A DNA stretch of 64,000 bases from IMGVR_UViG_3300022868_000009:248001-312000; one strand, 5' to 3'. Shown: positions 12,765 to 63,338, numbered from the stretch's first letter. Made by a program: numbers and translations. Notes: generated by a model from the letters alone, not told the origin.

Positions 12765-13520
12765 TTATAAATGCGGATCAAAATTAAAAAAAGTTATCTG
12801 TTCTTCTATTATTCTAAAAAAGAATTTTACTTCATTATTTTCTTTGTCAACATTTGTATATGGTGTAACTTTTTCAATCCAAGATTTATCTTGTGCAAAA
12901 TGTATTAACGATTGGTTTAAAAGTGTTTCATCTTTGTGATCTTCTTTAAATAAATCTAAAGACATAGTTTTACTAATTCTTAATTCATCTAATATTTTAA
13001 CTTCAGATTTTACATTAGACCACCAATCCACAAAATCTTTTTTAACTTGATGTAATAAATTTAAATTCTTAAGATTAGAATCTTTTAATCTCAACTTAAT
13101 TGATTTAACACATTGGTGTCTTGGAAAATCATACCTTAAAAATCTATCATTAATTTTAAATTTCCCTATTTTATAGACTAGATTTTTTATACTATTATAG
13201 AATCCATATTCTAAAATTTTATTCTTTATACCTATAAAAAATGATAATTTATCGTCTTTAATACTTCTTAATGTCAAAAATGCAGTTTCTAAACTTTTCT
13301 TCATTTCTAATTCACCAAGTAATTCATTAATCTTCGTTATTCTATCAGTTGAAAAAAAATAGTAAAAACTACCAGTATTTAAATAGTTTTGGAAAGCAAA
13401 ATCATTACCATGTTTATTAACCAAATCAAAAAAAATTCTAAATCCTTCTTTACCAGCTAACAATGGTTCTATTTGTATTTGTTCATTTATAAATTGTATA
13501 TATGTATTAATAACTTTCAT
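12765..13520 (-). CDS. Hypothetical protein with CTS-like leader (MKVINTYIQFINE)
   Basis: N-terminal motif shared with about 16 ORFs in the window. Confidence 0.6.
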   Translation of the reverse strand: MKVINTYIQFINEQIQIEPLLAGKEGFRIFFDLVNKHGNDFAFQNYLNTGSFYYFFSTDRITKINELLGELEMKKSLETAFLTLRSIKDDKLSFFIGIKNKILEYGFYNSIKNLVYKIGKFKINDRFLRYDFPRHQCVKSIKLRLKDSNLKNLNLLHQVKKDFVDWWSNVKSEVKILDELRISKTMSLDLFKEDHKDETLLNQSLIHFAQDKSWIEKVTPYTNVDKENNEVKFFFRIIEEQITFFNFDPHL

Positions 13521-13852
13521 AATAATCCAAGTTTAATTGCTTCTATTTTTGTATTTAAATCATTAATATTTTTAATATCCTCAGATTTACAAAATACATA
13601 GTTCGATTCACCACCCAAATTCTCTTCAATGCCAGTGTATGTTATTAAATTGTAATCTAGTTGATAAATTATACCTTTTATATAATTTTTAAAAGATTTT
13701 GGTTGTTGATCTGAATAACCATGCCCATCTTGCCAATATATCTTATTATTGAAAAACATTTCTTGCAATCTATAAAATTCTGATTTATCACACGATATAA
13801 TTAAATATTTTTCATTCGTTGTTCTTTCATTATATGTTTTTAAATACTTCAT
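13517..13852 (-). CDS. Small protein carrying both the MKYLKTYNE leader and the C-terminal EAIKLGLL tag
   Basis: Both motifs visible; core resembles the 55.9-62.4 kb family (..LQEMFFNNKIYW..). Confidence 0.75.
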   Translation of the reverse strand: MKYLKTYNERTTNEKYLIISCDKSEFYRLQEMFFNNKIYWQDGHGYSDQQPKSFKNYIKGIIYQLDYNLITYTGIEENLGGESNYVFCKSEDIKNINDLNTKIEAIKLGLL

Positions 13853-50768: not shown

Positions 50769-51842
50769 CTAAGAAACTACATACTTATATAACTTCTTGT
50801 GATAGTCAAGATCCTTATAATCACTAACCATCAAATAAACTATATAACAAAAATAAAATATTTTATCAATCATCAAACTTCTATCAACATCACCACCAAC
50901 AAACCTAAATTCAACATAATCATCATCAATAATTCTTCTTAAATTCATACCGAAAGTTTTAGAACCTAGATTATTAGATAATTCCTTTAATTCGATTTCC
51001 AAAAACTTCTCAACATCATCTACAAAATTATCACTACTAAACTCAGGAAACTCACCCTTCTTTATCTTATCTAAAAATGTCTGACAATATGCAGTAAATT
51101 GTCTATATTCAATATCTTTATAAATATAGGGTTTTTCACTAGTCTCAACCATCATAATTAAACCCTTTACAAAATTCCATCTATCTACATCTTTATTTAA
51201 ACCAATATTAATATGAATAGAAGTGTGATTATTCATATACCAATAATCCTGTTTATTAAAATCATCATAAAAATCATTAATCATTTCTAAACCTTTATCC
51301 AAACCAGTCACATATTTCTTAGGTGAAAATTCAACCCCCCTAGATAAAGTTTGATCAAACTCAAATTTTAAATCATCATAATATTTAGTATAAAAATTAG
51401 GCAAATATTCACCAATTTTATTTATAACATATCCAAGATTTTCAAATTCATCTTCTTCCTCTTCCTCATATTCAATTTCTAAATTATCAATAATATTAAT
51501 CATATTAGAAACTATATATTCCTCTGTCTTATTCTTACAACTATTCATAATATTATCCAAAGAATCAGATATATTTCCAAAATCAAACTGATTATAAACT
51601 ATCTGTTTTAAAAAATCTAAATCATAATCAATTTTATCAATGTCTAATCCAACACGTAATTTTTTAAATATTTCTAATAAATACTTATCCTCTACTTTAG
51701 AAACTTTAACATTCTCATCATCTGTTTCTAATTCAAATTCAAAAGCTAATGTAAAATGTTCTACCATACCAGAATCAAATAATAATTTCTTATCTTTTCT
51801 ATTAAATTCTAGTAATTGTTTATATGTTATAAGATATTTCAT
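50769..51842 (-). CDS. Putative amidoligase (COOH-NH2 ligase type 2) with CTS-like leader
   Basis: FEFELE, EFSP, TSIHINIG, VEFR; leader MKYLITYKQLLE. Confidence 0.75.
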   Translation of the reverse strand: MKYLITYKQLLEFNRKDKKLLFDSGMVEHFTLAFEFELETDDENVKVSKVEDKYLLEIFKKLRVGLDIDKIDYDLDFLKQIVYNQFDFGNISDSLDNIMNSCKNKTEEYIVSNMINIIDNLEIEYEEEEEDEFENLGYVINKIGEYLPNFYTKYYDDLKFEFDQTLSRGVEFSPKKYVTGLDKGLEMINDFYDDFNKQDYWYMNNHTSIHINIGLNKDVDRWNFVKGLIMMVETSEKPYIYKDIEYRQFTAYCQTFLDKIKKGEFPEFSSDNFVDDVEKFLEIELKELSNNLGSKTFGMNLRRIIDDDYVEFRFVGGDVDRSLMIDKIFYFCYIVYLMVSDYKDLDYHKKLYKYVVS

Positions 51843-51878: not shown

Positions 51879-52271
51879 ATGAAAAATTTTTTAAATTTTA
51901 TAAATAATAATCACGAATATTCAAATAATGAAATGAATAAAATTATTAAATTCATTGGCAAATTATGTAAATATGAAAACAAAAAAGCAAACGCAATATT
52001 CAATTTTAACATATCAAAAAATATACTTAATGATACAGATTTTAATGCATCAGTAAGATCAAATAACATATATTCAAACGATATAAAACAAGTTACAAAA
52101 ATACTTGATAAAGTATGCGAAAAATTAAATATGTATCCAACAATAAATATTATGATTAATACATTTGGTAGATCAACAAATTATAATATTAACTGTACAT
52201 TTGAATTTACAGAAAAAAATAAATTAGACATTCTTGCAACTATAGAAGGAAATAAATTAGGACTATTATAA
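51879..52271 (+). CDS. Small dual-tag protein (leader-like N-terminus, ...EGNKLGLL)
   Basis: Terminal motifs. Confidence 0.7.
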   Translation: MKNFLNFINNNHEYSNNEMNKIIKFIGKLCKYENKKANAIFNFNISKNILNDTDFNASVRSNNIYSNDIKQVTKILDKVCEKLNMYPTINIMINTFGRSTNYNINCTFEFTEKNKLDILATIEGNKLGLL

Positions 52272-52616
52272 ATGAAACATCTTAAAAAATATAACGAAGA
52301 GAAAATAGAAAATAAATGGAAAAATACAATAGTAATTTATGAATCTTACTCGGATTCATGGGTATATGTAGATGGTTCATTGATATCAGAATGGTCTGTT
52401 ACCATATTTGATATATTATTAATATTATCAGAGGATAATGTTAATATATTGAAATATAAAATATCAATGTTAACAGATCATTTTCCTCAAAATATAATTG
52501 ATCATTTAAACGATCACCCAGAACAAGAATTTCCAATGTATGATTTAGATATATATGAACAAGAAATAATAAAAAGAAAAGCAGAAAAAGAAGGACAAAA
52601 AATGGGTCTGTTTTAA
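52272..52616 (+). CDS. Small dual-tag protein (MKHLKKYNEE ... EGQKMGLF)
   Basis: Terminal motifs. Confidence 0.75.
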   Translation: MKHLKKYNEEKIENKWKNTIVIYESYSDSWVYVDGSLISEWSVTIFDILLILSEDNVNILKYKISMLTDHFPQNIIDHLNDHPEQEFPMYDLDIYEQEIIKRKAEKEGQKMGLF

Positions 52617-52617
52617 A

Positions 52618-52941
52618 ATGAAACATATTTCAACATATAACGAATACTTACAAACACCCTTAAATTTATCAATACCAATATAGAAGATAATGATAAATTT
52701 ACAAATTACCTAGAACAATCAAACCTAATATCAAAAAATTCTTTATTTAGAACATATCATAAAGGATGTATATATCATACATTTTTAATATCAATTATAG
52801 ATAATCATTCTTAAAAATTAGTTGTTCAAACCCAGATAATGTATCTGGGTTTGAACAAAAAGGAGTAAATGAAATATTATTTGATCCAGATATAATTATA
52901 TAATTATAAGATTAGAAGCAAATAAAATGGGATTATTATGA
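52618..52941 (+). pseudogene. Disrupted dual-tag gene (MKHISTYNE ... RLEANKMGLL)
   Basis: Both terminal motifs intact, but internal stops and frameshifts; contains a perfect 17-bp inverted repeat. Confidence 0.7.
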
Positions 52942-53219
52942 AATATTTAAAGACATACAACGAATCAAAATATAAACCATCATATACTGCACGCCCAATG
53001 CCAGATAAATATCGGCTTAGATGTGAATATTTAATAGATAAATACGGTAAACTAAATACAAATAATAAAATTACACATTTATCAGAAGAATCAGAAATTT
53101 TACAAATAGATATAAATGATGATTATAGATTAGATATTTTTAAAACTACTGATAAATCGTTACTTAATATGAGAGAATTAGAAATGAAATTACAAGCAAA
53201 AGAATTAGGATTGTTATAG
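52938..53219 (+). CDS. Small dual-tag protein (MKYLKTYNE ... QAKELGLL)
   Basis: Terminal motifs. Confidence 0.75.
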   Translation: MKYLKTYNESKYKPSYTARPMPDKYRLRCEYLIDKYGKLNTNNKITHLSEESEILQIDINDDYRLDIFKTTDKSLLNMRELEMKLQAKELGLL

Positions 53220-53281
53220 ATTTAATGAAAAGGGGAATTTATATTATAATATATTTAATGTATCATAATTTAGCACCTTTT

Positions 53282-53667
53282 TTATAATAATCCCATTTGA
53301 TTTGCCTGTTTAACATTATCGAGTGATATACCAACATTTTTTTCTAACCAATTTTCAATTGTAATATAATTGTATTTTTTATAATCAGGATCTTGTAAAT
53401 TATTTTGTAAATATACCATACTACCCCCAATTAAAATCATAATCTTTAACATTAAATATTTCATAATTTTCTTGAGAAATAGATATCAGAAAATAACTAG
53501 GTCTACCACCAGAATAACGAAAAATATAATCATAATCTATATCAATATTATAAAAATCATCATATAATGAAAATAATACAAAATTAATACATAATATATG
53601 TATACATAATATTAAAACAGATGATATAAAATTATTAGAAAAAATATGTTGTTTTAAGGTATTTTAT
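53282..53667 (-). pseudogene. Decayed dual-tag gene; the residual ORF 53282-53464 ends QANQMGLL
   Basis: ATA-AAA-TAC-CTT-AAA-ACA (ATG>ATA, KYLKT) overlaps the upstream stop; frameshifts in between. Confidence 0.55.
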
Positions 53668-54050
53668 AACAATCCCATTTTTTTCGCAGTTAATATTTTT
53701 TCTATTTCAGAACCTAATAAAAATGCATTTAATTTTATGAGTATAGAATTATCTAAATCATCATATTGTACATTTCTTTCATATTCACTATCTGATAAAT
53801 TATAATAATAAATAATACCGGTTGTATTAATATTACTTTGATAAATGTCAAATTTTAAATCATCTAATTTTATTTTTATTAAATTAGTAGATGTAGATCT
53901 ACCATAAAGATCAGATATTCTATTATTACCATCATTATTTTTTTCACCGTATTTATCTAGTAAATATAAACACCTATTAAATACTTTATCAGGCATTAAA
54001 TAACAATGATTTCTATTAATTTTTTCTAAATATGATTTCAAATATCTCAT
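53664..54050 (-). CDS. Small dual-tag protein (MRYLKSYLE ... TAKKMGLL), paralogue of 52938-53219
   Basis: Shared MPDK...RC.YL.DKYG core. Confidence 0.75.
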   Translation of the reverse strand: MRYLKSYLEKINRNHCYLMPDKVFNRCLYLLDKYGEKNNDGNNRISDLYGRSTSTNLIKIKLDDLKFDIYQSNINTTGIIYYYNLSDSEYERNVQYDDLDNSILIKLNAFLLGSEIEKILTAKKMGLL

Positions 54051-54091
54051 TAATCTTATATATTAAATTTAAATAAGAATATATAAATAAT

Positions 54092-54394
54092 ATGAAATAC
54101 CTTAAAACATATAATGAAAATAAATCATTTAATGATAAAGTTAATATGATTAAAAAAATAGTAGACACCGTTGGTAAAACTGATGATAGAGGTAAAATTT
54201 TAAATTTAAACTATAAATCAAAAGGTTCTAAAACCTATCTTTTAAAAATTCAAGATACATGCTGGATAAGTATTGAGATGATAGGTACAAGATTTTTAAG
54301 AAATTTAGATTCTAGAGTAATTGAATCTATATATAAAGAATTAAAAGAAAAATACCCAGAGTTTTTTATGGGAGATAAATTAGGTATTTTATAA
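54092..54394 (+). CDS. Small dual-tag protein (MKYLKTYNE ... MGDKLGIL)
   Basis: Terminal motifs. Confidence 0.75.
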   Translation: MKYLKTYNENKSFNDKVNMIKKIVDTVGKTDDRGKILNLNYKSKGSKTYLLKIQDTCWISIEMIGTRFLRNLDSRVIESIYKELKEKYPEFFMGDKLGIL

Positions 54395-54900
54395 AATAAA
54401 AGTCTTAAAAAATTTTCCAAAAAAATTTTCCAAAAAAATTTTAGAAACAAAATCCCAGTTTCTAAGTTATACTTTGTAACGGATACCCAAACGTAATTAT
54501 ATTATATATTATATTATATACACTTTTTAAATTTACACTTTCTGACAAATACTTAATATCTACTACAAAACAGTTACTAATTTAAATGAACACTACTTAC
54601 TCTATAAAAACAAACTTACTATTCTGTGATATAAAAAGTACTCTATTTACTATAAAATAGTTAATACCTTATATAGATAATACTTTATTTTAAAATAAAC
54701 TTCTTTATATTATTTAAAATAAACTTCTTCATGACCTCATATATTCACTATATCTATATATGTAGATAGGTGGCCCGTGAGCTATTTTTACTTATTATTA
54801 TTAATCTTAAATTAGGAGGATTTTTATAATCCTTATCTATTATTATTTTTTTGTCATGGATCATTGTGACATCTTTTTTTATTTTTATATTAAGGTTGCT
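54395..54900. other. Non-coding AT-rich region with short repeats at a strand-composition switch; candidate replication origin
   Basis: (aaaaattttccaa) repeats, tttaaaataaacttctt x2; + strand changes from C/A-rich to G/T-rich. Confidence 0.45.
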
Positions 54901-54905
54901 TTCCT

Positions 54906-54913
54906 TATCTTTG
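54906..54913 (+). promoter_or_regulatory. Bacteroidota-type -7 element TATCTTTG
   Basis: TAnnTTTG preceded by ttcct, as in the other copies. Confidence 0.65.
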
Positions 54914-54936
54914 TAATGAATAAAAATTATAATGAG

Positions 54937-55488
54937 ATGGAAAATTATTTTAAAATTGAACATGGAAGAAAGGTTGAGACATACACACCTAAAGATACAT
55001 ATGTATTAACATGGAATGAAAGACATGGTGATGCTGATCAAAGTATGCCTACATCTATGACTATACACAGTATGGATGAGTTATGGTTCATGTTATGGTT
55101 TAGTAAGTGGTTAGATAGATACAGACAGTATAGTGACTTAGATGAGTATAGTAAGGTACTTAATAAGTATAGTAAGGAGTTATTGGGTAGTAGTTGGTAT
55201 ATAACTGATTGGTGTAGTGATGTGTATGATCATGATTGTATATATTCTAGTTGTTATTGTGGTGTGGATGCCATGAAGTTATATTATTATGATGAGCATG
55301 GTGTTAAGTATGAAGAGGAGATTGATGGTAGTACATATATATCTTTAGTGAAGATGGGATATAAGTTAGATTGTTGGTTCATTGATAAGTATCCACATAT
55401 AGCTAATGAGTTACAGGGTATGATATGTGATGCTGCATTGGAAGATAAGAAGGATGTTATTGAGGCTAATAAAATGGGGTTGATATGA
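54937..55488 (+). CDS. Early protein with C-terminal EANKMGLI tag; related to 59584-60093
   Basis: GDAD and LYYYDEHGVK motifs; start placed downstream of the promoter (54916 also possible). Confidence 0.7.
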   Translation: MENYFKIEHGRKVETYTPKDTYVLTWNERHGDADQSMPTSMTIHSMDELWFMLWFSKWLDRYRQYSDLDEYSKVLNKYSKELLGSSWYITDWCSDVYDHDCIYSSCYCGVDAMKLYYYDEHGVKYEEEIDGSTYISLVKMGYKLDCWFIDKYPHIANELQGMICDAALEDKKDVIEANKMGLI

Positions 55489-55817
55489 TAGATAAGAATA
55501 TAGTTATAGTATCGTATAGTAAAGAGGAGTTTAATTATGTATTGAATCTATTTAAATCTAGGGAGTTCAGTAGGTCTACGATTGATTCGTATCTACGTTA
55601 CGTTAATGATGATGGTCATTATAATGATTATGTATATCCTATTGCATTAATTGTGAGGTTTAAATTAATGTCAGCAACGTGGCAGTATAAAGATATGTGG
55701 GATCATATTAATGATTTATTAGATAGGGGTGAGGTTGATAGTGTTATTGATTGTAAAGATTTCAAAGAGATGGGTGGTGATAATTATATTGAAGGTATTA
55801 AATTAGGTTTACTTTAA
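55485..55817 (+). CDS. Small tag protein (...EGIKLGLL)
   Basis: C-terminal motif. Confidence 0.75.
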   Translation: MIDKNIVIVSYSKEEFNYVLNLFKSREFSRSTIDSYLRYVNDDGHYNDYVYPIALIVRFKLMSATWQYKDMWDHINDLLDRGEVDSVIDCKDFKEMGGDNYIEGIKLGLL

Positions 55818-55846
55818 AGTTTAGAAGGTATTCCTTATCTTTGTAT
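55815..55846 (+). promoter_or_regulatory. Repeated early promoter taaagtttagaaggtattccttatctttgtat
   Basis: Near-identical copies at 58048, 58798 and 63287; contains TATCTTTG. Confidence 0.75.
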
Positions 55847-55889
55847 TGAATATAATTTAAAGAATAGAAAATGATAAAAGGAATAAGTA

Positions 55890-56207
55890 ATGACATATAA
55901 GGTATTGATTAAGGTTCGTAATGAATCTGAATGGATATCATGTTGTGATATGTTGTATAGTCATGGTTATCGATGGCAAGACAATTGTATGGACTCAAAG
56001 AAGATACATGGATATAAGTTGATAAGTGAAGGTGATATATATTTAGTTATATATAATCATACTGACCCTCATCATCATGATGATCGTTTATTTTATAATA
56101 CTAATGTTAATGTTGATATTTATGGGCCGGATGTTATTATAATTAATTATGTTGAAGGTATGGATTTACATGAGATAATAGAAGTTAATAAATTGGGATT
56201 AATATGA
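55890..56207 (+). CDS. Small tag protein (...EVNKLGLI)
   Basis: KVRNESEW.SCC.MLYSHGY.W core. Confidence 0.75.
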   Translation: MTYKVLIKVRNESEWISCCDMLYSHGYRWQDNCMDSKKIHGYKLISEGDIYLVIYNHTDPHHHDDRLFYNTNVNVDIYGPDVIIINYVEGMDLHEIIEVNKLGLI

Positions 56208-56539
56208 TAGTATTTAGTAAAGATATAAAGAAAATAAATATTAAGGTTCGTAATGAATCTGAATGGGTATCATGTTGCAATATGTTGTATAGTCATGGTT
56301 ATCATTGGAATGTTGAGTCTGATTTTATGGAGATATATTCTGAATGTTTAGAAACTGCTAAGGAATATATTAAGACTTATGCAATAAATGATGGTATATA
56401 TTTAGTTGTTTATAATGATAATAGTGGACGGTTATATTATAATTATAAATATAAGACTGATGGTATAATAAATCTTGATTGGTATGATGGTATGGATTTA
56501 CATGAGATAAATGAAGCTAATAAATTGGGGTTAATATGA
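56204..56539 (+). CDS. Small tag protein (...EANKLGLI); recent paralogue of 55890-56207
   Basis: Near-identical DNA over the KVRNESEW...GY segment and the GMDLHEI tail. Confidence 0.75.
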   Translation: MIVFSKDIKKINIKVRNESEWVSCCNMLYSHGYHWNVESDFMEIYSECLETAKEYIKTYAINDGIYLVVYNDNSGRLYYNYKYKTDGIINLDWYDGMDLHEINEANKLGLI

Positions 56540-56841
56540 AAGAGAAGATATACATAATATTAAATAATATAGATGATTGGATTAATTGTTGTAATCAATT
56601 AGACAATGAGGGATATTTTTGGGCAAGAAGTAGTGACTCATATAAAGATAAATATCATAAATGTAAAACTTTCGGTAATCCTGAAAATTATATAGTAATA
56701 GGTCATAATGAGTATGATGATAATCGTTTATATTATGGTAATATATATAATGATAAGAAGTTTGATGGTATTATTTTATATTGGGATGCTGATGTAGATT
56801 TAGAAAGTTATTTTGCAGGTTTAAAAATGGGATTATTATAA
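56536..56841 (+). CDS. Small tag protein (...AGLKMGLL)
   Basis: CC.QL..EGYFW core plus tag. Confidence 0.75.
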   Translation: MKEKIYIILNNIDDWINCCNQLDNEGYFWARSSDSYKDKYHKCKTFGNPENYIVIGHNEYDDNRLYYGNIYNDKKFDGIILYWDADVDLESYFAGLKMGLL

Positions 56842-56951
56842 TAATATTTTCATGTTTGACCAGGGAGAATTTAGGTTGGAGGAAAGGGGATATTTTTATT
56901 TGGTGAAGGTTTGTTGTGTATTTGTGTATAAATTAAAATGTAAAAAAGATT

Positions 56952-57332
56952 ATGATAAAATGGATTAATATAAGGCTGGAAGGTTATGGTAAAGGTAAAG
57001 GTAAAGGTAAAGGTAAGAAGAAACTGAATAAGATGGTTATGCGTAAATTGTTACATCAAATTGATTGTAAGGTTGGTTTTCGTATTAAGGATGGTGGATG
57101 GAAACCAGTTTTAAATAGTTTAAAAGAATATAAGCATTATAAATATATATGGATTGCTATATGTCCTTTTGGTAAAGATATGGCTGCGGATTATCATGAA
57201 AATAAAGAAGAATGGGAGAGTTATAAAGACGGTATTGAGGCGGATGAAGCTGAGGTATGGTTGAGTTGGGAAGAGTTTATGGATTTAGATATTCAGATGA
57301 TTGTTAATGGTTCTAAAATGAATTTATTATGA
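56952..57332 (+). CDS. Small tag protein (...NGSKMNLL) with a (GK)5 microsatellite
   Basis: ggtaaa repeats at ~56988-57017. Confidence 0.7.
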   Translation: MIKWINIRLEGYGKGKGKGKGKKKLNKMVMRKLLHQIDCKVGFRIKDGGWKPVLNSLKEYKHYKYIWIAICPFGKDMAADYHENKEEWESYKDGIEADEAEVWLSWEEFMDLDIQMIVNGSKMNLL

Positions 57333-57721
57333 AAGATATAAAGTGGATAAATATAATGTTAGACTGGGATAAGTTTAAGTGGGAACAATTCCATGATGTT
57401 GTTGATTATTATAAAGAGTTATTTCCTAAATTAGATTGGACAACTGTTCAAACTGAGATACAGATACATGATAAAATTCGAAATGAATCTGTTTTTGATA
57501 TTTTAGGTTTATCTATATGTTTGGAACATGATAGTAATGATTTTAATATTAATAATTGTGAAAATACTATAAATAATTGGCATCCTGTTATATTTAAGTA
57601 TGGTATTGGTGATGATTTATATGACAAGCAAACTGGTATTGAAATAATTGTTAAATATAGTAAAGATTTCCGTGAAGAGATTGAGTTTTATTTAGAGGGT
57701 TCTAAAATGGGTTTATTATGA
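57329..57721 (+). CDS. Small tag protein (...EGSKMGLL)
   Basis: C-terminal motif; IKWINI shared with the previous gene. Confidence 0.75.
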   Translation: MKDIKWINIMLDWDKFKWEQFHDVVDYYKELFPKLDWTTVQTEIQIHDKIRNESVFDILGLSICLEHDSNDFNINNCENTINNWHPVIFKYGIGDDLYDKQTGIEIIVKYSKDFREEIEFYLEGSKMGLL

Positions 57722-58050
57722 AAAAAACAATAATATTTTTACATAACAATAAGGATTTGGGCAACTTGTTCATGTATTTACATGTTATTGGATGCAAATG
57801 GTCTAGTGGTAGACCTATTATAATAGATAGTGAAATACAAAGATTTAATTTATCTTGTTCTAGATCTAAATCTGTTGCAATTATCGTTGATGATGGTAGT
57901 CTTACTTATGTATCAAATAAGAAAGATATTGTTTATAGTTATATATCTGGTGATAAATTTAAATATTATGATCATTATGAGTATGTAGATTTTGATAAGG
58001 AGTTTGATATTGATGTAACTATTAATGGTAATAAGATGGGATTACTTTAA
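57718..58050 (+). CDS. Small tag protein (...NGNKMGLL)
   Basis: YLH.IG.KW...YDHYEY core. Confidence 0.75.
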   Translation: MKKTIIFLHNNKDLGNLFMYLHVIGCKWSSGRPIIIDSEIQRFNLSCSRSKSVAIIVDDGSLTYVSNKKDIVYSYISGDKFKYYDHYEYVDFDKEFDIDVTINGNKMGLL

Positions 58051-58080
58051 AGTTTAGAAGGTATTCCGTGTCTTTGTATT
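58048..58080 (+). promoter_or_regulatory. Repeated early promoter copy (TGTCTTTG variant)
   Basis: taaagtttagaaggtattccgtgtctttgtatt. Confidence 0.65.
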
Positions 58081-58102
58081 ATAATTAAAGGAGGAAACAA
58101 AA

Positions 58103-58438
58103 ATGAAAATGATAATATATGCACATAATGACGAAGATATTTATAAGTTATCAACTTATTTACATTATATTGGAATTAAATGGCAAACTGAAATTTTTAT
58201 TATGAATGATGGTGAAATGACAATAGATTGTAATAGAGCTGAATCTAAATCTATTGCATTTTGTGTTAAAAATAATCGTGTGTCATATATGAATGATGGT
58301 GGTTCTTTTGGTGGTGATGTTTATAATTTTTTCAAAAGGCAACCATATGAATGTTATGACCATTATGAGTATATTGAATTTGATAAGGAGTTTGGTGTTG
58401 ATATGGTTTTAGAATCAATAAAGATGGGTTTATTATGA
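58103..58438 (+). CDS. Small tag protein (...ESIKMGLL)
   Basis: Paralogue of 57718 and 58435; AAGGAGG upstream. Confidence 0.75.
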   Translation: MKMIIYAHNDEDIYKLSTYLHYIGIKWQTEIFIMNDGEMTIDCNRAESKSIAFCVKNNRVSYMNDGGSFGGDVYNFFKRQPYECYDHYEYIEFDKEFGVDMVLESIKMGLL

Positions 58439-58800
58439 AAAAAACAATAATATATGTACATAGTGATGAGGATATGATTAATTTATTAAGTTATTTACAT
58501 TTTGTTGGAGTTACATGGCATGGCTCTGCTATTATAAAAGATGATGATAGTTCCGATAATTTTTTTAATGCCGATGCCAGATATATAGATATTAGTTGTA
58601 AAAAAACGGGAACTGTTGGATTTTGTATTGATCAAGATGATTATATTACATATATGGATGATGGTACTTTTAAAGGCGAGAATGTTTATGAATATTTCGG
58701 TAGAGATTTTATGGAGTATGATCATTATGAGTATGATGAATATGTTGAAAAGTTTGATATTGAACCACTCATAAATGGAATAAAGATGGGTTTACTTTAA
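58435..58800 (+). CDS. Small tag protein (...NGIKMGLL)
   Basis: Paralogue of 57718 and 58103. Confidence 0.75.
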   Translation: MKKTIIYVHSDEDMINLLSYLHFVGVTWHGSAIIKDDDSSDNFFNADARYIDISCKKTGTVGFCIDQDDYITYMDDGTFKGENVYEYFGRDFMEYDHYEYDEYVEKFDIEPLINGIKMGLL

Positions 58801-58830
58801 AGTTTAGAAGGTATTCCGTATCTTTGTATT
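58798..58830 (+). promoter_or_regulatory. Repeated early promoter copy
   Basis: taaagtttagaaggtattccgtatctttgtatt. Confidence 0.75.
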
Positions 58831-58852
58831 ATAATTAAAAAGGAGAAGAAAA

Positions 58853-59107
58853 ATGAAAAAGAAACAAAATAAAAAAGAAGAGAGTAAATATCAATACAGA
58901 AGTGATACTGCTGTTAGGGTTGAAGAAACTGAATATAGTGTAAATGAGTATGACGAATGGGATCGCATAGTATTTTATTTATGGAAGAAGAGTGGTTATT
59001 GGTCTGTGAATGTTTTTGCTCCTGTAACTGATGGTAAAAGGGTTTCATTAGAACCTTTACAAGTAATTCATAAGTATTGGACATCTTATAATAAATTATC
59101 AATATGA
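58853..59107 (+). CDS. Hypothetical early protein
   Basis: Behind a promoter and AGGAG. Confidence 0.6.
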   Translation: MKKKQNKKEESKYQYRSDTAVRVEETEYSVNEYDEWDRIVFYLWKKSGYWSVNVFAPVTDGKRVSLEPLQVIHKYWTSYNKLSI

Positions 59108-59370
59108 AAAGATTAAATATATTTGTAAGAAGTGGATTACAGCAAACGTTGTTTCTACATTATTTATATACTAATGGTTATAGTTATAAAGATAGAAAGG
59201 ATCTTTATTGGAAATTTACTAATGGTTCAGGTGCTATTGTGGTTAATGTAATTGATAAAATAATATTAGGTGGTAACACAGGTTGGTTTGCAACACAATC
59301 ACATATGAATGTAAAAGAATTTGTTGATAAGGCGTGGGAATTTGAAAGTATGAGGATTGGTGTATTATGA
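59104..59370 (+). CDS. Small tag protein, divergent tag (...ESMRIGVL)
   Basis: LY.NGY core plus tag variant. Confidence 0.65.
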   Translation: MKRLNIFVRSGLQQTLFLHYLYTNGYSYKDRKDLYWKFTNGSGAIVVNVIDKIILGGNTGWFATQSHMNVKEFVDKAWEFESMRIGVL

Positions 59371-59414
59371 TTAAGGAATATCATATATGTATTATAAATA
59401 AAAAGGAGAAAAAA

Positions 59415-59606
59415 ATGCTAACAATATTAACAATATTATTAATATGGAATCAATTTAGTGGTTGGTTTAGAAAGATGTTTTGTAAAATTGGTTTACACAC
59501 ATGGATTAAAGTCTATTCACATAATGAAAAAGGTTGGCATATAAAGGAAAAGAAATGTAGAATATGTAATAAGGAGGTAAAAAATGATAAAAATAATAGA
59601 AAATAA
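59415..59606 (+). CDS. Small protein with C-x3-H...C-x2-C motif (DUF1660-like)
   Basis: FCKIGLHTW...CRIC; AGGAG before ATG 59415. Confidence 0.55.
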   Translation: MLTILTILLIWNQFSGWFRKMFCKIGLHTWIKVYSHNEKGWHIKEKKCRICNKEVKNDKNNRK

Positions 59607-60093
59607 AACACAAACTAAAAGAATTGAACCTTATTATAGGTTAAAATTTAGTTACATGATTGGTGATGCTGATGGTGACACTACAGAGAAGATTGATATT
59701 CCTCTTAACAATCCATATGTCGAAAGAGTTGTTGATGTTTTAAATAATTGTGATACACCTAAAGGTCATTGGGGTATGATATTAGACTCTGAACATTTCA
59801 CTAAGTTATTGAATCAGGGTAAAATGACACAGAGTGATTATAATTTTTGTAAAGTGGTTGTATTTGGTGATGACATTGATGAACACATGGAAGAGTTTTT
59901 CAGCAAGGAAAGAATTGAGGCTGACAAATTAAAATTATTGGAGATAACTGGCGATGAAAAATCATACGCTTATGAATTTGAAGAGGCTTGTATTACTTCG
60001 ATTGGACATAGTTTCGCAGTTTTTGAAGGTATTGATTTATATTATATTGATGAATATGGAGTAAAACATGAGACCAAAATAGTTGATGATTAA
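59584..60093 (+). CDS. Early protein related to 54937-55488 but lacking the tag
   Basis: IGDADG, LYYIDEYGVKHE. Confidence 0.7.
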   Translation: MIKIIENKTQTKRIEPYYRLKFSYMIGDADGDTTEKIDIPLNNPYVERVVDVLNNCDTPKGHWGMILDSEHFTKLLNQGKMTQSDYNFCKVVVFGDDIDEHMEEFFSKERIEADKLKLLEITGDEKSYAYEFEEACITSIGHSFAVFEGIDLYYIDEYGVKHETKIVDD

Positions 60094-60110
60094 AACATTA
60101 AAATGGTAAG

Positions 60111-60140
60111 GAATTTCAGAAGGAGTTCCTTATCTTTGTA
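60111..60140 (+). promoter_or_regulatory. Early promoter copy
   Basis: tttcagaaggagttccttatctttgta. Confidence 0.65.
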
Positions 60141-60167
60141 TTAATATTAATTTAAAGAAGAAATAAA

Positions 60168-60395
60168 ATGATAAAATATAAAATAACAGATGAAAAAATT
60201 GAAGTAGGCGACATTGTTGCTTATGGAATAACATGGAGAGAGAAACGTGTAAGAAAGCACGGTTATGTACTTGGTGTTTGGGAAGAATATTGGGATGAGG
60301 ATTCACAGAAGTTTAGAAATAAGGTTGAATGTGTTGATAAAGATAATCATATAATTCGTAGTGAAGAATGGTTAAAAAAGGTGGTATTGATATGA
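60168..60395 (+). CDS. Hypothetical early protein
   Basis: 75 aa; IEVGDIV SH3-like start. Confidence 0.55.
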   Translation: MIKYKITDEKIEVGDIVAYGITWREKRVRKHGYVLGVWEEYWDEDSQKFRNKVECVDKDNHIIRSEEWLKKVVLI

Positions 60396-60697
60396 TAAAA
60401 CGATATTATAAAATAGGAATAGATATTCCTGATAATAAATTTGTTAAGTTGATATCAGATCATTTATATTCTTTGGGTTATAAATGGTGTAGTGATTTTA
60501 GAGACGAATCTTTTTATGATAAAGTAACGAATGAATGTATAAGAAGTAATGTGCGTGGTATTGGTGTTGAATGTAATGGTCGCATGAGTTACAATGTTGT
60601 TAAAAATCAAACTGAAAAGTGGTATTCTCTTGAAGAATATGTAATAAAATATGATTTAGTGATTGAATATGAAGGATTAAAAATGGGTTTATTATGA
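60392..60697 (+). CDS. Small tag protein (...EGLKMGLL)
   Basis: LYSLGYKW core; ATGA overlap start at 60392. Confidence 0.75.
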   Translation: MIKRYYKIGIDIPDNKFVKLISDHLYSLGYKWCSDFRDESFYDKVTNECIRSNVRGIGVECNGRMSYNVVKNQTEKWYSLEEYVIKYDLVIEYEGLKMGLL

Positions 60698-60801
60698 GAA
60701 AGAGAAAACGAATCAAGGAAAATATTGACTATTTGTTATTTGGAATGGATTGTGCATTGATAGTATTATTTGTATTATTCATAGTATTAATTATAATTTA
60801 G
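60694..60801 (+). CDS. 35-aa single-pass membrane peptide (below the ORF-track cutoff)
   Basis: MRKRKRIKENIDYLLFGMDCALIVLFVLFIVLIII; ATGA overlap with the upstream gene. Confidence 0.55.
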   Translation: MRKRKRIKENIDYLLFGMDCALIVLFVLFIVLIII

Positions 60802-60810
60802 GAGGAAAAA

Positions 60811-61161
60811 ATGAGAAAAATATATTTAGCAACAAATTATTTCACAGCGTTAACCCCGCTTGATGATGATAACAATTTATTAAAATTAGAAAGAGGTAAA
60901 GATCCTGTTATTATTTGTACCCTTGAGAAATATCTGGAAGATGTTGATAACACAATAATCACAGGTAACATATTAAGATTAGAAATAATTGCAAAAACAG
61001 ATGATGGTTGGATAATTGAACAAGAATTTATAACACCGGGAATGTTAGAGAGTTTGAATTGTAGAAAGATAAGTCTTGACTCACAATTTATTGAAACTTT
61101 AAATCGAAGCCAGAAAGTGGCTTTAGAGTTAAAGAATATAAATGAAAAATTGTCAAGGTAA
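60811..61161 (+). CDS. Hypothetical early protein
   Basis: AGGAGG upstream. Confidence 0.6.
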   Translation: MRKIYLATNYFTALTPLDDDNNLLKLERGKDPVIICTLEKYLEDVDNTIITGNILRLEIIAKTDDGWIIEQEFITPGMLESLNCRKISLDSQFIETLNRSQKVALELKNINEKLSR

Positions 61162-61329
61162 ATTTTTTTATTAAGTAGAATCACCGTATATTTGTATTAT
61201 ACAATTGAGAAGATAGAAAAAGAAGAGAAATAAACAGAATGATTTTTTAATTCAGAATAAAGTTCTTATCTTTGTATAGACAAAAACAAGTAAACATAAT
61301 ATTAATTAATTTAAAAAACGAAAAACAAA

Positions 61330-61644
61330 ATGGCAAACAAAAAAGATTTAACAAACGCAATTGCAATAGCTACAGGCAAAACAAAAAAAGATAGCAAAGA
61401 ATTAGTAAACGTCATAATGGCATCTATTAAATCTGAATTAAGTAACGGTGAAGGTTCTATCGTAAAATTAGTAAACTTTGGAACATTTAAAGTAGTTAAT
61501 CGAAAAGCAAGAAAAGGAAGAAATCCAAGGACTGGTGAATCAATTGATATCCCTGCAAAGAATGTAGTTAGATTCAAAGCTGGTAAAGGTCTTAAAGAAG
61601 CGGTTGATTATACTGCTGAAGAAAGAGAAGAATTAGGAATATAA
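61330..61644 (+). CDS. hup: HU/IHF-family DNA-binding protein
   Basis: NKKDL..AIA...VKLVNFGTFKV..RKARKGRNPRTGE.I.IPAK.VVRFKAGK.LKEAV. Confidence 0.95.
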   Translation: MANKKDLTNAIAIATGKTKKDSKELVNVIMASIKSELSNGEGSIVKLVNFGTFKVVNRKARKGRNPRTGESIDIPAKNVVRFKAGKGLKEAVDYTAEEREELGI

Positions 61645-61667
61645 GAAATAAAACTCCTGAAATATCG

Positions 61668-61694
61668 AAGCCACCTGGAGAGGTGGCTTTTTTT
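61668..61694 (+). terminator. Intrinsic terminator after HU
   Basis: aagccacct-ggag-aggtggctt plus T-tract. Confidence 0.85.
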
Positions 61695-61721
61695 ATTTGA
61701 AAAAATTCCTTATATTTGTAT

Positions 61722-62042
61722 ATGAATAACGAAAAATATATAAGGTTTAAGGTAAAAACTCTATCAGATAGTAAGAGTATTCAAGAATTTTTATTTTCTT
61801 TAGGATATATGTGGTGTTCAGAAAATAGGAAAGAATATTATTATATGAATTTTGAAACGTCTGATATTTTATTATGTCTTGAGAGTGACTTTAATCCTAA
61901 TATAGATCATATTTTTCATGGTGATGTAGAGATATTAAATTATGATAAAAGATGGATGGATAAGATAATAAAATCTTATGATATGAGTAATTATAAAGAT
62001 TTTATTCAATATAAAAATGCAAAACAACTGGGATTAATTTAA
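61722..62042 (+). CDS. Small tag protein (...NAKQLGLI)
   Basis: FKV...SK.IQEFLFSLGY.W core; TATATTTG just upstream. Confidence 0.75.
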   Translation: MNNEKYIRFKVKTLSDSKSIQEFLFSLGYMWCSENRKEYYYMNFETSDILLCLESDFNPNIDHIFHGDVEILNYDKRWMDKIIKSYDMSNYKDFIQYKNAKQLGLI

Positions 62043-62072
62043 TATTAAGAACAAACTCCGTATCTTTACACT

Positions 62073-62378
62073 ATGAAAAAACATGAAAAATTTATATTAT
62101 TTAAGGTTGATACTTCAAGGGAAAGTAAGGAAATTCAAGAATTTTTGTTTTCTTTAGGTTATTCTTGGCGTGGAGATAATAATATGGAATATTTCTCTGT
62201 TGAAATTGGGGCTTATATTTTATTATGTGTTGATAGTAATAATATTAAGAGCAAAAATTGTATTTTTTATGGAAATGATAAAATGCAATATGATCAAGAA
62301 CTTATAAAATCTTATAACATGAATAATTATAAAGATTCTTTATGTTTTATAGAATCATTTAAATTGGGATTATTTTAA
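62073..62378 (+). CDS. Small tag protein (...ESFKLGLF); paralogue of 61722
   Basis: Shared core. Confidence 0.75.
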   Translation: MKKHEKFILFKVDTSRESKEIQEFLFSLGYSWRGDNNMEYFSVEIGAYILLCVDSNNIKSKNCIFYGNDKMQYDQELIKSYNMNNYKDSLCFIESFKLGLF

Positions 62379-62517
62379 AATTGAGAACAAACTCCGTATC
62401 TTTACATAGTTAAAGGGCGGAGAATTTTTATAGGTTCTGGGAGAGTAGACTCCAACTTGCGATATATTTTTTTTAACACAATTTTTATTTCTTAGAAGTA
62501 ATCCGTATCTTTGTTAT

Positions 62518-62949
62518 ATGAAAATGAAAGTATTATATATTAAAGCTGAAAACATGAAAGATGGTGATTTTGACATTATGTTAAAATTTGTTAATAATAA
62601 TAAAAATTTAGATTATTATTTAACAGGTATAAATATGGGGGGTATTATGAGAACATTTATATGTATAGCCGTAAATGATGATAATTATAATGAGGTTAAA
62701 GAAAAATTATTCTCTAAATATAATACACCATCACATATTACTGATTTTCAAAATTATGAAGATTATAAATATCCCTATTTATCAATTGAAATATCAATGG
62801 AAAATGAACATGCAGATCATTTAACTATTCATCCTTTGAATGATGATGATGTAGATGTTAAAAATTTTGAAATAATTTATAGTAATATTGATGACATATT
62901 TGATGATATTGATATGCATATAACTACAAAAAAACTTGGTTTATCTTAA
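62518..62949 (+). CDS. Small tag protein (...TTKKLGLS)
   Basis: Tag variant; TATCTTTG just upstream. Confidence 0.7.
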   Translation: MKMKVLYIKAENMKDGDFDIMLKFVNNNKNLDYYLTGINMGGIMRTFICIAVNDDNYNEVKEKLFSKYNTPSHITDFQNYEDYKYPYLSIEISMENEHADHLTIHPLNDDDVDVKNFEIIYSNIDDIFDDIDMHITTKKLGLS

Positions 62950-62964
62950 CTAAAAAAAATAATT

Positions 62965-63285
62965 ATGAGAAAATTTAATTGTATTAAAATAGAAAATGAA
63001 GAACATTTAAATGAATGTTATAAAAAGATAATTGATCTTAAAACACATTATCCATATAACACTTTTGTTGATAGATTTATTATGATAAAGGGTTATTGTA
63101 TTGGTTTTGAAATAGAAGAAATAGAAGAAGGAAGATTAATTTTAACATTTTTAACTGATAATGATCTTCAACGATTTGATGAATCAAATGAATTAGCTTT
63201 TAATTGTAATTATTTTAATGATATTGATTCTTTTGTTGAATATCATAAGATTTATTTTGATTGTAGATCATTAGGGGTTTTATAA
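62965..63285 (+). CDS. Small tag protein (...DCRSLGVL)
   Basis: Tag variant. Confidence 0.65.
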   Translation: MRKFNCIKIENEEHLNECYKKIIDLKTHYPYNTFVDRFIMIKGYCIGFEIEEIEEGRLILTFLTDNDLQRFDESNELAFNCNYFNDIDSFVEYHKIYFDCRSLGVL

Positions 63286-63286
63286 G

Positions 63287-63317
63287 AAAGTTTAGAAGGT
63301 ATTCCGTATCTTTGTAT
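63287..63317 (+). promoter_or_regulatory. Repeated early promoter copy
   Basis: aaagtttagaaggtattccgtatctttgtat. Confidence 0.75.
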
Positions 63318-63338
63318 AAATATTAAAATAATATAATT

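What the first reader, a model, noticed from the sequence alone, without database searches (positions are those of the whole stretch)
51879..63285. About 24 otherwise unrelated small proteins share a C-terminal K-(L/M)-G-L-L-stop tag: candidate undescribed targeting or docking system
Seen: 23 ORFs plus one pseudogene end in (E/N/x)-(G/A/S)-x-K-(L/M)-G-(L/I/V)-(L/I/F) immediately before the stop: EGNKLGLL, EGQKMGLF, QAKELGLL, QANQMGLL, TAKKMGLL, GDKLGIL, EANKMGLI, EGIKLGLL, EVNKLGLI, EANKLGLI, AGLKMGLL, NGSKMNLL, EGSKMGLL, NGNKMGLL, ESIKMGLL, NGIKMGLL, ESMRIGVL, EGLKMGLL, NAKQLGLI, ESFKLGLF, TTKKLGLS, DCRSLGVL, plus the outlier 13517-13852 (EAIKLGLL). The bodies belong to several different families. 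Codons vary synonymously (gga/ggt/ggg, tta/ttg/ctt), and the motif occurs on both strands and with TAA, TGA or TAG stops, so selection appears to act on the peptide with a free C-terminus. Inference: a shared ligand that recruits many effectors to one hub. Candidates are a sliding clamp (the beta-clamp motif QL[SD]LF/QLGLF is similar), a protease or adaptor (timed degron), or a phage scaffold or compartment. I know of no description of such a tag.
Basis: partly seen in the sequence, partly recalled or inferred. Interest (0 to 1): 0.92.

Follow-up and report, generated by a model that had tools for sequence, protein, structure and literature searches.

The report
Shared C-terminal address tag, huge phage
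In an uncultivated 350-kb phage, about 86 small and mostly unrelated proteins packed into one gene island all end in the same 14-residue peptide (…E-A-x-K-M-G-L-L-stop), which looks like an address label for one still unknown docking partner and has not been described before.

Summary
All 23 ORFs and the pseudogene end as described. The 8-residue ending is the core of a ~14-residue module ([DE][LI]xxΦ[IL]E[AGS]xK[ML]GLΦ-COOH).

Scale:
- The window is part of a 348-kb huge-phage contig with T4-like replication genes.
- The cluster is the left edge of an island of at least 71 kb.
- In that island 85 of about 166 ORFs carry the tag, against 1 of 53 in the rest of the window.

Nature of the tag:
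- Synonymous codons vary as in the genome at large, so selection acts on the peptide.
- With termini removed, the 86 carriers fall into 60 BLAST-unlinked groups.
- Two modelled carriers have different folds: an α/β protein and an LRR solenoid. In both the tag is a short terminal helix plus a 4-residue coil.
- The tag occurs only in this small phage clade, and no description was found.

What it binds was not shown. I read it as a docking or sorting peptide for one shared receptor. My ranking is head loading (like the T4 capsid-targeting sequence), then an AAA+ protease, then the sliding clamp. The clamp is least likely, because Lys replaces the conserved Gln and no replication enzyme read carries the tag.

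A second shared motif, N-terminal MKYLKTYNE, was also found.

The parts
13517..13852 (-). Tagged ORF, 111 aa, the only carrier outside the island; also has the N-terminal MKYLKTYNE motif
   Evidence: ends EAIKLGLL
51879..52271 (+). Tagged ORF, 130 aa, first gene of the island
   Evidence: ends EGNKLGLL
52272..52616 (+). Tagged ORF, 114 aa, with N-motif
   Evidence: ends EGQKMGLF
52618..52941 (+). Pseudogene: N-motif and tag intact in frame 1, at least 3 frameshifts between them
   Evidence: identical in the sibling contig
52938..53219 (+). Tagged ORF, 93 aa, with N-motif
   Evidence: ends QAKELGLL
53282..53464 (-). Tagged ORF, 60 aa
   Evidence: ends QANQMGLL
53664..54050 (-). Tagged ORF, 128 aa, with N-motif; paralog of 52938
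   Evidence: ends TAKKMGLL
54092..54394 (+). Tagged ORF, 100 aa, with N-motif
   Evidence: ends GDKLGIL
54856..55488 (+). Tagged ORF, 210 aa; weak paralog of the untagged 59584-60093, which stops before the tag-bearing extension
   Evidence: ends EANKMGLI
55485..55817 (+). Tagged ORF, 110 aa
   Evidence: ends EGIKLGLL
55890..56207 (+). Tagged ORF, 105 aa, alpha/beta family A
   Evidence: ends EVNKLGLI
56204..56539 (+). Tagged ORF, 111 aa, family A; the modelled member
   Evidence: pLDDT 73, helix 99-107 then a 4-residue coil; no PDB fold match
56536..56841 (+). Tagged ORF, 101 aa, family A
   Evidence: ends AGLKMGLL
56952..57332 (+). Tagged ORF, 126 aa, Asn in place of Gly at -3
   Evidence: ends NGSKMNLL
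57329..57721 (+). Tagged ORF, 130 aa
   Evidence: ends EGSKMGLL
57718..58050 (+). Tagged ORF, 110 aa, three-member paralog group
   Evidence: ends NGNKMGLL
58103..58438 (+). Tagged ORF, 111 aa, same paralog group
   Evidence: ends ESIKMGLL
58435..58800 (+). Tagged ORF, 121 aa, same paralog group
   Evidence: ends NGIKMGLL
59104..59370 (+). Tagged ORF, 88 aa, degenerate tag
   Evidence: ends ESMRIGVL
60368..60697 (+). Tagged ORF, 109 aa, family A
   Evidence: ends EGLKMGLL
61716..62042 (+). Tagged ORF, 106-108 aa (ATG at 61722), family A
   Evidence: ends NAKQLGLI
62073..62378 (+). Tagged ORF, 101 aa, family A
   Evidence: ends ESFKLGLF
62518..62949 (+). Tagged ORF, 143 aa, weakest tag (last residue Ser)
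   Evidence: ends TTKKLGLS
62965..63285 (+). Tagged ORF, 106 aa, degenerate tag
   Evidence: ends DCRSLGVL
61330..61644 (+). HU homolog with a 12-residue C-terminal extension ending ...EELGI, a possible truncated tag; two further HU paralogs downstream end the same way
   Evidence: Pfam Bac_DNA_binding 5e-31; paralogs in L305 and L307
55818..55847 (+). Promoter-like intergenic repeat containing TAnnTTTG; copies also at 58051-58080, 58801-58830 and 63289-63318, and diverged copies before 60168, 61330, 61722 and 62518
   Evidence: (6 matches against 0.7 expected)

Best explanation
The shared ending is a modular C-terminal short linear motif. It is about 14 residues long: [DE]-[LI]-x-x-hydrophobic-[IL]-E-[A/G/S]-x-K-[M/L]-G-L-(L>I>Y>F)-COOH, a short amphipathic helix followed by a Gly-Leu-Leu end at the free carboxyl terminus. 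At least 60 sequence-unrelated families of small, mostly acidic proteins carry it: 86 genes, median 111 aa. These genes fill half of one accessory-gene island of at least 71 kb in a ~350-kb huge phage with T4-like replication genes. The phage is uncultivated, and its promoter-like motifs suggest a Bacteroidetes-type host. I propose that the tag is an address label: the exposed C-terminal peptide docks every carrier onto one common receptor, so that diverse and fast-evolving binder or inhibitor bodies (one family is an LRR protein with 2-6 repeats) are all handled by a single machine. SHOWN: peptide-level conservation, strict C-terminal register, modularity across unrelated bodies and two predicted folds, confinement to one island and one small phage clade. 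INFERRED: that it docks, and to what. The confidence of 0.6 applies to the general claim (a docking or sorting peptide for one shared partner). Within that claim my best single guess is the assembling phage head, i.e. loading of proteins that are ejected with the DNA as with the T4 capsid-targeting sequence (about 0.3). Second is an AAA+ protease, with the tag acting as degron or adaptor tether (about 0.2). A sliding clamp is about 0.1. The remainder is an unforeseen partner.
For: Enrichment at the C-terminus: P = 5e-105. Logo: 2-4 bits per position over -8 to -1 except -6, weaker back to -14; position -3 is Gly or Asn only. Codons at Lys, Leu and Glu follow genome usage. After cutting both termini, 86 carriers fall into 60 BLAST clusters. 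Profile-profile comparison of tail-less families finds only the N-terminal motif in common. Nine carriers in the 166-kb contig 3300022890_000011 show no detectable body similarity to the own-genome carriers; a tagged LRR family is the one body found in both phages. Folds: family A is alpha/beta (pLDDT 73) with no PDB neighbour. The LRR family is a solenoid (Pfam LRR_4, E 1e-19 to 5e-29; AF2 pLDDT 92.7). In both models the tag is a terminal helix plus a 4-residue coil. Island map: 85 of about 166 ORFs tagged, against 1 of 53 to the left. A weak paralog pair exists with and without the tag-bearing extension. Distribution: multi-tag contigs are 4 related IMG/VR contigs only. A profile of carriers with both motifs finds 21 proteins among 1.84 billion representatives. 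Precedent for a short terminal tag on otherwise diverse phage proteins: the T4 CTS (PMC3012670, PMC9026906, PMC8442874). For head loading specifically: a hydrophobic-hydrophobic-Glu then small-residue pattern at -10 to -7 resembles prohead-protease sites (T4 logo L/I-x-E), and huge phages pack more than 50 head proteins (abstracts listed).
Against: No receptor was found and no complex could be modelled. None of the roughly 163 kb read encodes a recognisable PDZ, Clp, Lon or clamp protein, though about half of the contig is unread. In the LRR model the tail has pLDDT 84-93, so it may pack on its own protein rather than hang free. Against head loading: carriers are acidic (median pI 5.3) whereas T4 internal proteins are basic. 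Glu at -8 is present in only 44 of 86 tags. Many carriers sit behind a host-type promoter-like motif together with HU and SprT genes. Eighty-six cargo species is a very large number.
Confidence: 0.6

Rival explanations
1. Degron or adaptor tether. The free hydrophobic C-terminus is read by an AAA+ protease (ClpXP/ClpAP, Lon or FtsH type, host or phage). Either the tag clears a whole class of early proteins on schedule, or it tethers each binder to the protease so that the bound host target is destroyed.
For: Strict C-terminal register with a non-polar end, and a two-part layout of helix plus end. Carriers are small, acidic, diversifying, early-region-type proteins, and include an LRR binder family.
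Against: No sequence likeness to ssrA-type endings; this comparison is from my own knowledge, not tested here. No protease gene was seen in the roughly 163 kb read. I know of no phage precedent.
Confidence: 0.2
2. Sliding-clamp-binding tail. The last five residues mimic QL[SD]LF / QLGLF and tether the carriers to the host beta clamp or to a phage clamp.
For: Positions 2-5 fit: L/M, then G/N, then L, then L/I/Y/F. The motif is usually C-terminal. Pol II has QLGLF and UmuC has QLNLF, the same Gly/Asn alternation (PMC3716654). T4 gp43, gp33 and gp55 share interchangeable C-terminal clamp-binding tails (PMC2988020).
Against: The 'highly conserved glutamine' is Lys in 69 of 86 tags and Gln in 6. 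Topo II, two helicases, RNase H1, PolX, a DnaQ-like exonuclease, RNA ligase, gp32, a DnaB-like helicase, a RecA/UvsX-like protein and RNR all lack the tag. T4-type clamp tails are hydrophobic and acidic, and a 228-aa protein next to the helicase ends that way instead. Eighty-six competitors for one clamp pocket is hard to rationalise.
Confidence: 0.1
3. No shared receptor. The conserved termini are what remains of one ancestral small protein after explosive tandem duplication. The last helix is an intrinsic structural cap, or a homo- or hetero-oligomerisation helix among the paralogs.
For: Tandem arrays of paralogs. Gly or Asn only at -3 fits a helix C-cap. There is a small-xxx-small spacing between -7 and -3. 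The tail is modelled with fair confidence next to the body.
Against: An LRR solenoid and an alpha/beta fold cannot be divergent versions of one fold. The register to the stop codon is exact in 86 of 86 carriers. The tag is kept while bodies turn over between phages.
Confidence: 0.15
4. Nucleic-acid-level or translational signal. The conserved 3' ends serve termination-reinitiation for the next gene, recombination between cassettes, or a nascent-peptide effect at termination.
For: 18 of 62 carriers counted end in TGA, and several of these form an ATGA overlap with the next start. Gly at -3 prefers GGA, 63% against 24% genome-wide. The pseudogene keeps both termini.
Against: Synonymous sites otherwise vary as in the genome at large. 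M/L, L/I/V and L/I/Y/F exchanges are conservative at the protein level, not the DNA level. The tag also ends genes followed by long spacers or by convergent genes.
Confidence: 0.05

Closest known systems
T4 capsid-targeting sequence (CTS) of the internal proteins IPI-III
   Same: A short (~10 aa) conserved terminal peptide is the only feature shared by a diverse, fast-evolving set of small phage proteins. It routes them to one machine, the prohead core (PMC3012670, PMC9026906). This phage has T4-like replication genes (UvsW, gp32, fused Topo II).
   Different: The CTS is N-terminal, is cleaved after Glu, and sits on a handful of basic proteins. Here the tag is C-terminal, sits on 86 mostly acidic proteins, and cleavage is unproven. 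A separate N-terminal motif in this phage (MKYLKTYNE) resembles the CTS MKTYQEFIAE more than the C-tag does.
Clamp-binding C-terminal tails: bacterial QL[SD]LF/QLGLF, and T4 gp43/gp33/gp55 tails binding gp45
   Same: An interchangeable short C-terminal peptide on unrelated proteins docks in one hydrophobic pocket of a hub. Four of five core positions match the bacterial consensus.
   Different: Lys replaces the conserved Gln. The carriers are not replication or repair proteins. T4-type tails are acidic and hydrophobic.
ssrA-type C-terminal degrons and C-terminal adaptor tethers of AAA+ proteases (for example the SspB tail); comparison from my own knowledge
   Same: A free C-terminal peptide with a non-polar end is read by a ring machine, and the layout is two-part.
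   Different: No sequence similarity. Those tags are added co-translationally or sit on one adaptor, not on a quarter of a proteome.
Cargo-loading peptides of encapsulins and encapsulation peptides of bacterial microcompartments; comparison from my own knowledge
   Same: Short terminal amphipathic or Gly-hydrophobic peptides load unrelated cargo into a protein shell. Encapsulin shells have the phage-capsid fold.
   Different: No shell gene was seen beside the carriers, and the sequences differ.
Viral multigene families with a constant C-terminal docking module (poxvirus ankyrin-repeat/PRANC F-box-like proteins); comparison from my own knowledge
   Same: A variable repeat-type binder is joined to a constant C-terminal module that plugs into one hub, and the family is expanded in tandem in a large virus genome.
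   Different: That module is a folded ~50-aa domain docking to eukaryotic SCF ligases, whereas here it is a 14-aa peptide in a phage.

Membership tests
Bacterial beta-clamp-binding motif QL[SD]LF | Conserved Gln at motif position 1 | tested here: not met
   K 69, Q 6, N 5, R 4 of 86; consensus from PMC3716654
Bacterial beta-clamp-binding motif QL[SD]LF | Hydrophobic, small, Leu, then Phe/Leu at positions 2-5, often at the extreme C-terminus | tested here: met
   M 46 / L 36; G 79 / N 7; L at -2; L 58, I 13, Y 8, F 3 at -1
Bacterial beta-clamp-binding motif QL[SD]LF | Carried by replication or repair proteins | tested here: not met
   None of the DNA enzymes read in about 163 kb has it. The replicative polymerase was not found.
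Bacterial beta-clamp-binding motif QL[SD]LF | Binds the clamp pocket | not testable with these tools
   No complex prediction or binding assay is available here
T4-type capsid-targeting propeptide | Short conserved terminal peptide as the only shared feature of diverse small phage proteins | tested here: met
   60 unlinked body clusters, two folds
T4-type capsid-targeting propeptide | N-terminal position | tested here: not met
   The tag is C-terminal. C-terminal propeptides do exist in T4 Alt and gp21 (PMC9026906).
T4-type capsid-targeting propeptide | Prohead-protease site (L/I-x-E, then cleavage) at the tag boundary | tested here: inconclusive
   Hydrophobic at -10 and -9 and small at -7 in 78 of 86, but Glu at -8 in only 44 of 86
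T4-type capsid-targeting propeptide | Carriers found in the virion | not testable with these tools
   Needs virion proteomics
T4 gp45-binding tails | Hydrophobic and acidic extreme C-terminus | tested here: not met
   The core carries Lys at -5 and no acid in the last 7 residues; feature from PMC2988020
ssrA-like C-degron | Non-polar free C-terminus | tested here: met
   The last two residues are hydrophobic in 85 of 86
ssrA-like C-degron | Protease-dependent turnover | not testable with these tools
   Needs half-life assays
Leucine-rich repeat proteins (Pfam LRR_4) - one carrier family only | Tandem LRR units forming a solenoid | tested here: met
   E-values 2e-25, 2e-19 and 5e-29; AF2 model has 7 parallel strands and pLDDT 92.7

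The most novel reading that the evidence does not exclude
The phage runs its own protein-addressing code. A C-terminal tag on about 86 proteins, and a second N-terminal tag (MKYLKTYNE) on at least 29, route a large share of its accessory proteome to dedicated hubs. In the most interesting version the tagged proteins are an arsenal of target-specific binders that share one effector. Either they are all loaded into the head and injected ahead of gene expression, or they all plug into one protease that destroys whatever each binder holds. The second case would be a bacterial-virus counterpart of the ligase-hijacking adaptor families of eukaryotic viruses.
Probability: 0.3. Interest if true: 0.9.

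Novelty: new variant of a known kind. Interest (0 to 1): 0.75.

Why it matters
Short terminal sorting peptides are known in phages only for a few T4 internal proteins and for clamp partners. Here one peptide marks roughly half of a 71-kb island and more than 60 unrelated protein families.

If it is a docking label, it would:
- define the function class of about 86 ORFan proteins at once;
- point to a hub that a huge phage treats as central;
- give a portable 14-residue handle for finding that hub (peptide pull-down, complex prediction) and for loading or tethering foreign proteins;
- show how accessory genes of huge phages can diversify freely while keeping one invariant interface.

Tried and rejected
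- Known families: Pfam, PHROGs and PADLOC scans of 57 carriers gave no credible family. LRR was found only in the ...KMGLY family, which my first regular expression had missed.
- Homologs elsewhere: tblastn of two carriers against 50,697 phage records found nothing, and megablast of the region found nothing.
- Word-indexed protein searches returned only this phage and near-identical contigs. A tail-only hit cannot reach significance in libraries of that size.
Apart from one stretch of the 344-kb sibling contig, it returned only single, apparently chance matches.
- Large proteins elsewhere ending ...RVKLGLL look like tail-fibre proteins from their termini and I judged them unrelated; they were not scanned against any library.
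- The nearest GenBank relative is LR756501 (735 kb, Topo II 56% identical). Its first 250 kb hold no tag in 472 ORFs; the remaining 485 kb were not read.
- Foldseek of the family A model against the PDB found no neighbour.
- Walking the genome for a polymerase, clamp or protease took 9 look-ups and read about 163 kb. It found gp32, a DnaB-like helicase, a RecA/UvsX-like protein, RNR, PolX and RNase H, but no polymerase, no recognisable clamp and no protease.
- A 228-aa protein of clamp-like size had no PDB sequence match.
- Promoter class as a clue to timing was uninformative: carriers sit behind both upstream motif classes.
- The source habitat could not be verified from the paper checked.

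Full report
OBSERVATION.
The 24th copy, 52618-52941, is a pseudogene. Its first 21 codons and its last 10 codons (...EANKMGLL-stop) are in one frame. The middle is readable only in the other two frames, so there are at least three frameshifts. The sibling contig is identical over this stretch. No spurious overlapping ORF of the window carries the ending.

WHAT GENOME THIS IS.
- The window has 24% G+C and no tRNA genes.
- It encodes UvsW-like and DEAD_2 helicases, a fused type II topoisomerase, thymidylate synthase, an M23 peptidase, HU and SprT-like proteins, and baseplate- and tail-like proteins.
- The topoisomerase is 56% identical to that of the 735-kb uncultured phage LR756501 and 34-38% identical to those of jumbo phages.
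- The window lies in IMG/VR contig 3300023257_000007 (348,222 bp), at about 162.5-226.5 kb.
- Walking left of the window found PhoH, a CCA-adding-type enzyme, an AP endonuclease, T4-type gp32, a DnaB-like helicase, a RecA/UvsX-like protein and ribonucleotide reductase, followed by baseplate genes.
- I conclude that it is a huge phage with T4-like replication genes.

THE TAG IS LONGER AND FAR MORE NUMEROUS THAN REPORTED.
- A logo from 57 non-redundant carriers shows conservation from -14 to -1: [DE][LI]xx[YLF][IL]E[AGS]xK[ML]G L [L>I>Y>F] (counts for 86 carriers).
- Position -3 is Gly (79) or Asn (7) and nothing else.
- Scanning IMG/VR for one codon version of K-M-G-L-L-stop gave 66 stretches. 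Every stretch holding several tagged ORFs belongs to four contigs: this one, a 344-kb sibling, an 88-kb piece and a 166-kb contig. A second pattern gave the same picture.
- Chaining fetched loci shows one continuous island from window position 51,879 to at least 123,115. It holds about 166 ORFs of 45 aa or more, of which 85 are tagged: 65 on the + strand and 21 on the - strand (these strand counts are, before one nested duplicate was removed).
- In the 51.8 kb to the left, 1 of 53 ORFs is tagged. One more carrier lies just upstream of the window (L067).

PEPTIDE, NOT DNA.
- Codon choice at Lys -5, Leu -4, -2 and -1, and Glu -8 mirrors genome-wide synonymous usage. All three stop codons are used.
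- Only Gly -3 is skewed, with GGA at 63% against 24% genome-wide.
- Substitutions are conservative at the protein level: M/L, L/I/V and L/I/Y/F.
- The enrichment at the C-terminus over internal positions has P = 5e-105.

MODULARITY.
- With the first 10 and last 14 residues removed, the 86 carriers form 60 BLAST clusters. The largest has 7 members. The 23 in the window touch 16 clusters.
- hhalign between tail-less family profiles finds nothing except a shared N-terminal dozen residues.
- Nine carriers in the 166-kb contig show no detectable body similarity to those in this genome.
- The exception is one family found in both phages, which turned out to be LRR proteins. It scores Pfam LRR_4 at E 2e-25, 2e-19 and 5e-29 for three members and has two to six repeats per paralog.
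- AlphaFold models:
  - Family A is strand-helix-helix-three strands-helix (pLDDT 73, pTM 0.68). It has no PDB neighbour.
  - The LRR protein is a seven-strand solenoid (pLDDT 92.7, pTM 0.85).
  - In both, the tag forms a terminal helix ending at Lys -5, followed by a four-residue coil.
- A tagged 210-aa protein and an untagged 169-aa neighbour are weak paralogs. The untagged one stops where the tag-bearing extension begins.

DISTRIBUTION.
- No carrier matches Pfam, PHROGs or PADLOC credibly.
- Protein searches of billions of sequences return only this phage and its close relatives.
- A profile of 17 carriers that have both terminal motifs finds 21 proteins among 1.84 billion representatives. 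The 12 whose sequences I fetched all carry both motifs, apart from one N-terminally truncated fragment. Of six that were new to me, one lies in this genome, one on a 42.5-kb contig and four on contigs under 2.5 kb.
- The first 250 kb of LR756501 hold none.
- String searches of the paper library for the motif found nothing relevant.

WHAT IT DOES.
Nothing here measures binding, so the mechanism is inferred. I infer a docking peptide read by one shared receptor from four facts:
- an exact register to the free carboxylate in every copy;
- a hydrophobic end preceded by a short amphipathic helix;
- presence on unrelated bodies;
- retention while the bodies turn over.

The carriers look like binders or inhibitors. 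They are small and acidic (median pI 5.3, against 7.75 for small untagged ORFs), they have diversified in tandem, and one family is an LRR protein.

Candidate receptors, in my order of preference:

(a) The assembling head.
- The only phage precedent for such a label is the T4 capsid-targeting sequence. [quoted passage not shown]
- C-terminal propeptides exist in T4 Alt and gp21, and the protease logo is L/I-x-E (PMC9026906).
- The tag has hydrophobic-hydrophobic-Glu followed by Ala/Gly/Ser at -10 to -7.
- Against: Glu is present in only 44 of 86 tags, the carriers are acidic, and many lie behind a host-type promoter-like motif.

(b) An AAA+ protease, with the tag as degron or tether. This is plausible from the non-polar free end, but has no sequence precedent.

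(c) A sliding clamp.
- The last five residues resemble QL[SD]LF / QLGLF, including the Gly/Asn alternation seen between Pol II and UmuC (PMC3716654). T4 uses interchangeable C-terminal clamp tails (PMC2988020).
- Against: the conserved Gln is Lys, and no DNA enzyme read carries the tag.
- Against: a 228-aa protein next to the replicative helicase ends in a T4-style hydrophobic-acidic tail instead.

(d) No receptor at all, only a structural or oligomerisation helix inherited from a common ancestor. The two different folds argue against this.

(e) A nucleic-acid or termination signal. The synonymous variation and the variable downstream context argue against this.

COMPARISON AND NOVELTY.
The principle, a short terminal sorting peptide on diverse cargo, is known. 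This peptide, its C-terminal position on phage accessory proteins, its scale (86 genes in 60 families, half of an island) and its pairing with a second N-terminal motif are not described in anything I could search. I rate it a new variant of a known kind, of high interest. The receptor is the open question.

Noticed in passing
window 13517-13852(-), 52272, 52938, 53664(-), 54092 (tagged); 12765-13520(-), 17232-18005(-), 21892-22284(-), 26038-26499(-), 44159-44764(+), 50769-51842(-) (untagged); many more in L028, L060, L197, L306, L308-L312: A second shared terminal motif. At least 29 ORFs start with M-K-(Y/H)-(L/I)-K-(T/K/S)-(Y/F)-(N/E)-E. It co-occurs with the C-tag more than expected (both 21, N only 8, C only 66, neither 125; odds ratio 5, P = 1.6e-4). 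It also sits on an RNase H1 homolog (44159-44764, Pfam 1.9e-12) and on larger untagged proteins. Its codons vary, so selection is on the peptide. In the LRR model residues 1-6 have pLDDT below 50. It resembles the T4 capsid-targeting sequence MKTYQEFIAE (PMC8442874).
   Followed up: partly
window 61330-61644; L305 15982-16296; L307 6006-6314: Three HU paralogs in the island each carry a ~12-residue C-terminal extension ending ...EER(E/A)ELG(I/L). This looks like the tag core one residue short, with Glu in place of Lys.
   Followed up: no
window 55818-55847, 58051-58080, 58801-58830, 63289-63318; diverged copies before 60168, 61330, 61722, 62518, 22403: An intergenic repeat AAGTTTAGAAGGTATTCCGTATCTTTGTAT contains TAnnTTTG. 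From my own knowledge this matches the Bacteroidetes -7 promoter box, so it is probably a host-type promoter and a host clue. A second upstream motif, TTAATATATA, precedes structural genes, replication genes and some tagged genes.
   Followed up: partly
L311 18003-18689(-): A 228-aa protein between the DnaB-like helicase and ribonucleotide reductase ends ...IIGDFDFQ, a hydrophobic-acidic tail of the T4 clamp-partner type. The gp32 homolog (L310 15944-16900) has the usual acidic tail. Neither has the tag.
   Followed up: partly
L197 3592-4758 and L028 13499-14665: The same 388-aa IS605-type TnpB (OrfB_IS605, Cas12f-like TNB) is present in this phage and in the 166-kb contig.
   Followed up: no
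window 3803-9280(-) and 9295-12645(-): Two very large ORFs (1825 and 1116 aa) have no Pfam match. The second matches only PHROG 29329, of unknown function.
   Followed up: no
L197 1952-2779, 2771-3451(-), 6088-6978; L305 18342-19325: Enzymes are embedded among the tagged genes: a truncated Glu/Gln-tRNA-synthetase-like protein (which ends ...NNGLL), a DnaQ-like exonuclease, a PolX-like protein and an RNA ligase. None has the full tag.
   Followed up: partly
tag position -3, all carriers: The Gly codon GGA is used in 63% of tags against 24% genome-wide. This is the only synonymous bias in the tag and is unexplained.
   Followed up: no
L028 8275-8598, 9898-10275; L308 117158-117448 and L309 118055-118396 (window-scale coordinates): Degenerate tag variants exist (...KMDLI, ...KMALLV with one extra residue, ...KKLQLL, ...KMKLW). 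My counts are therefore lower bounds, and decay of the tag can be observed.
   Followed up: no
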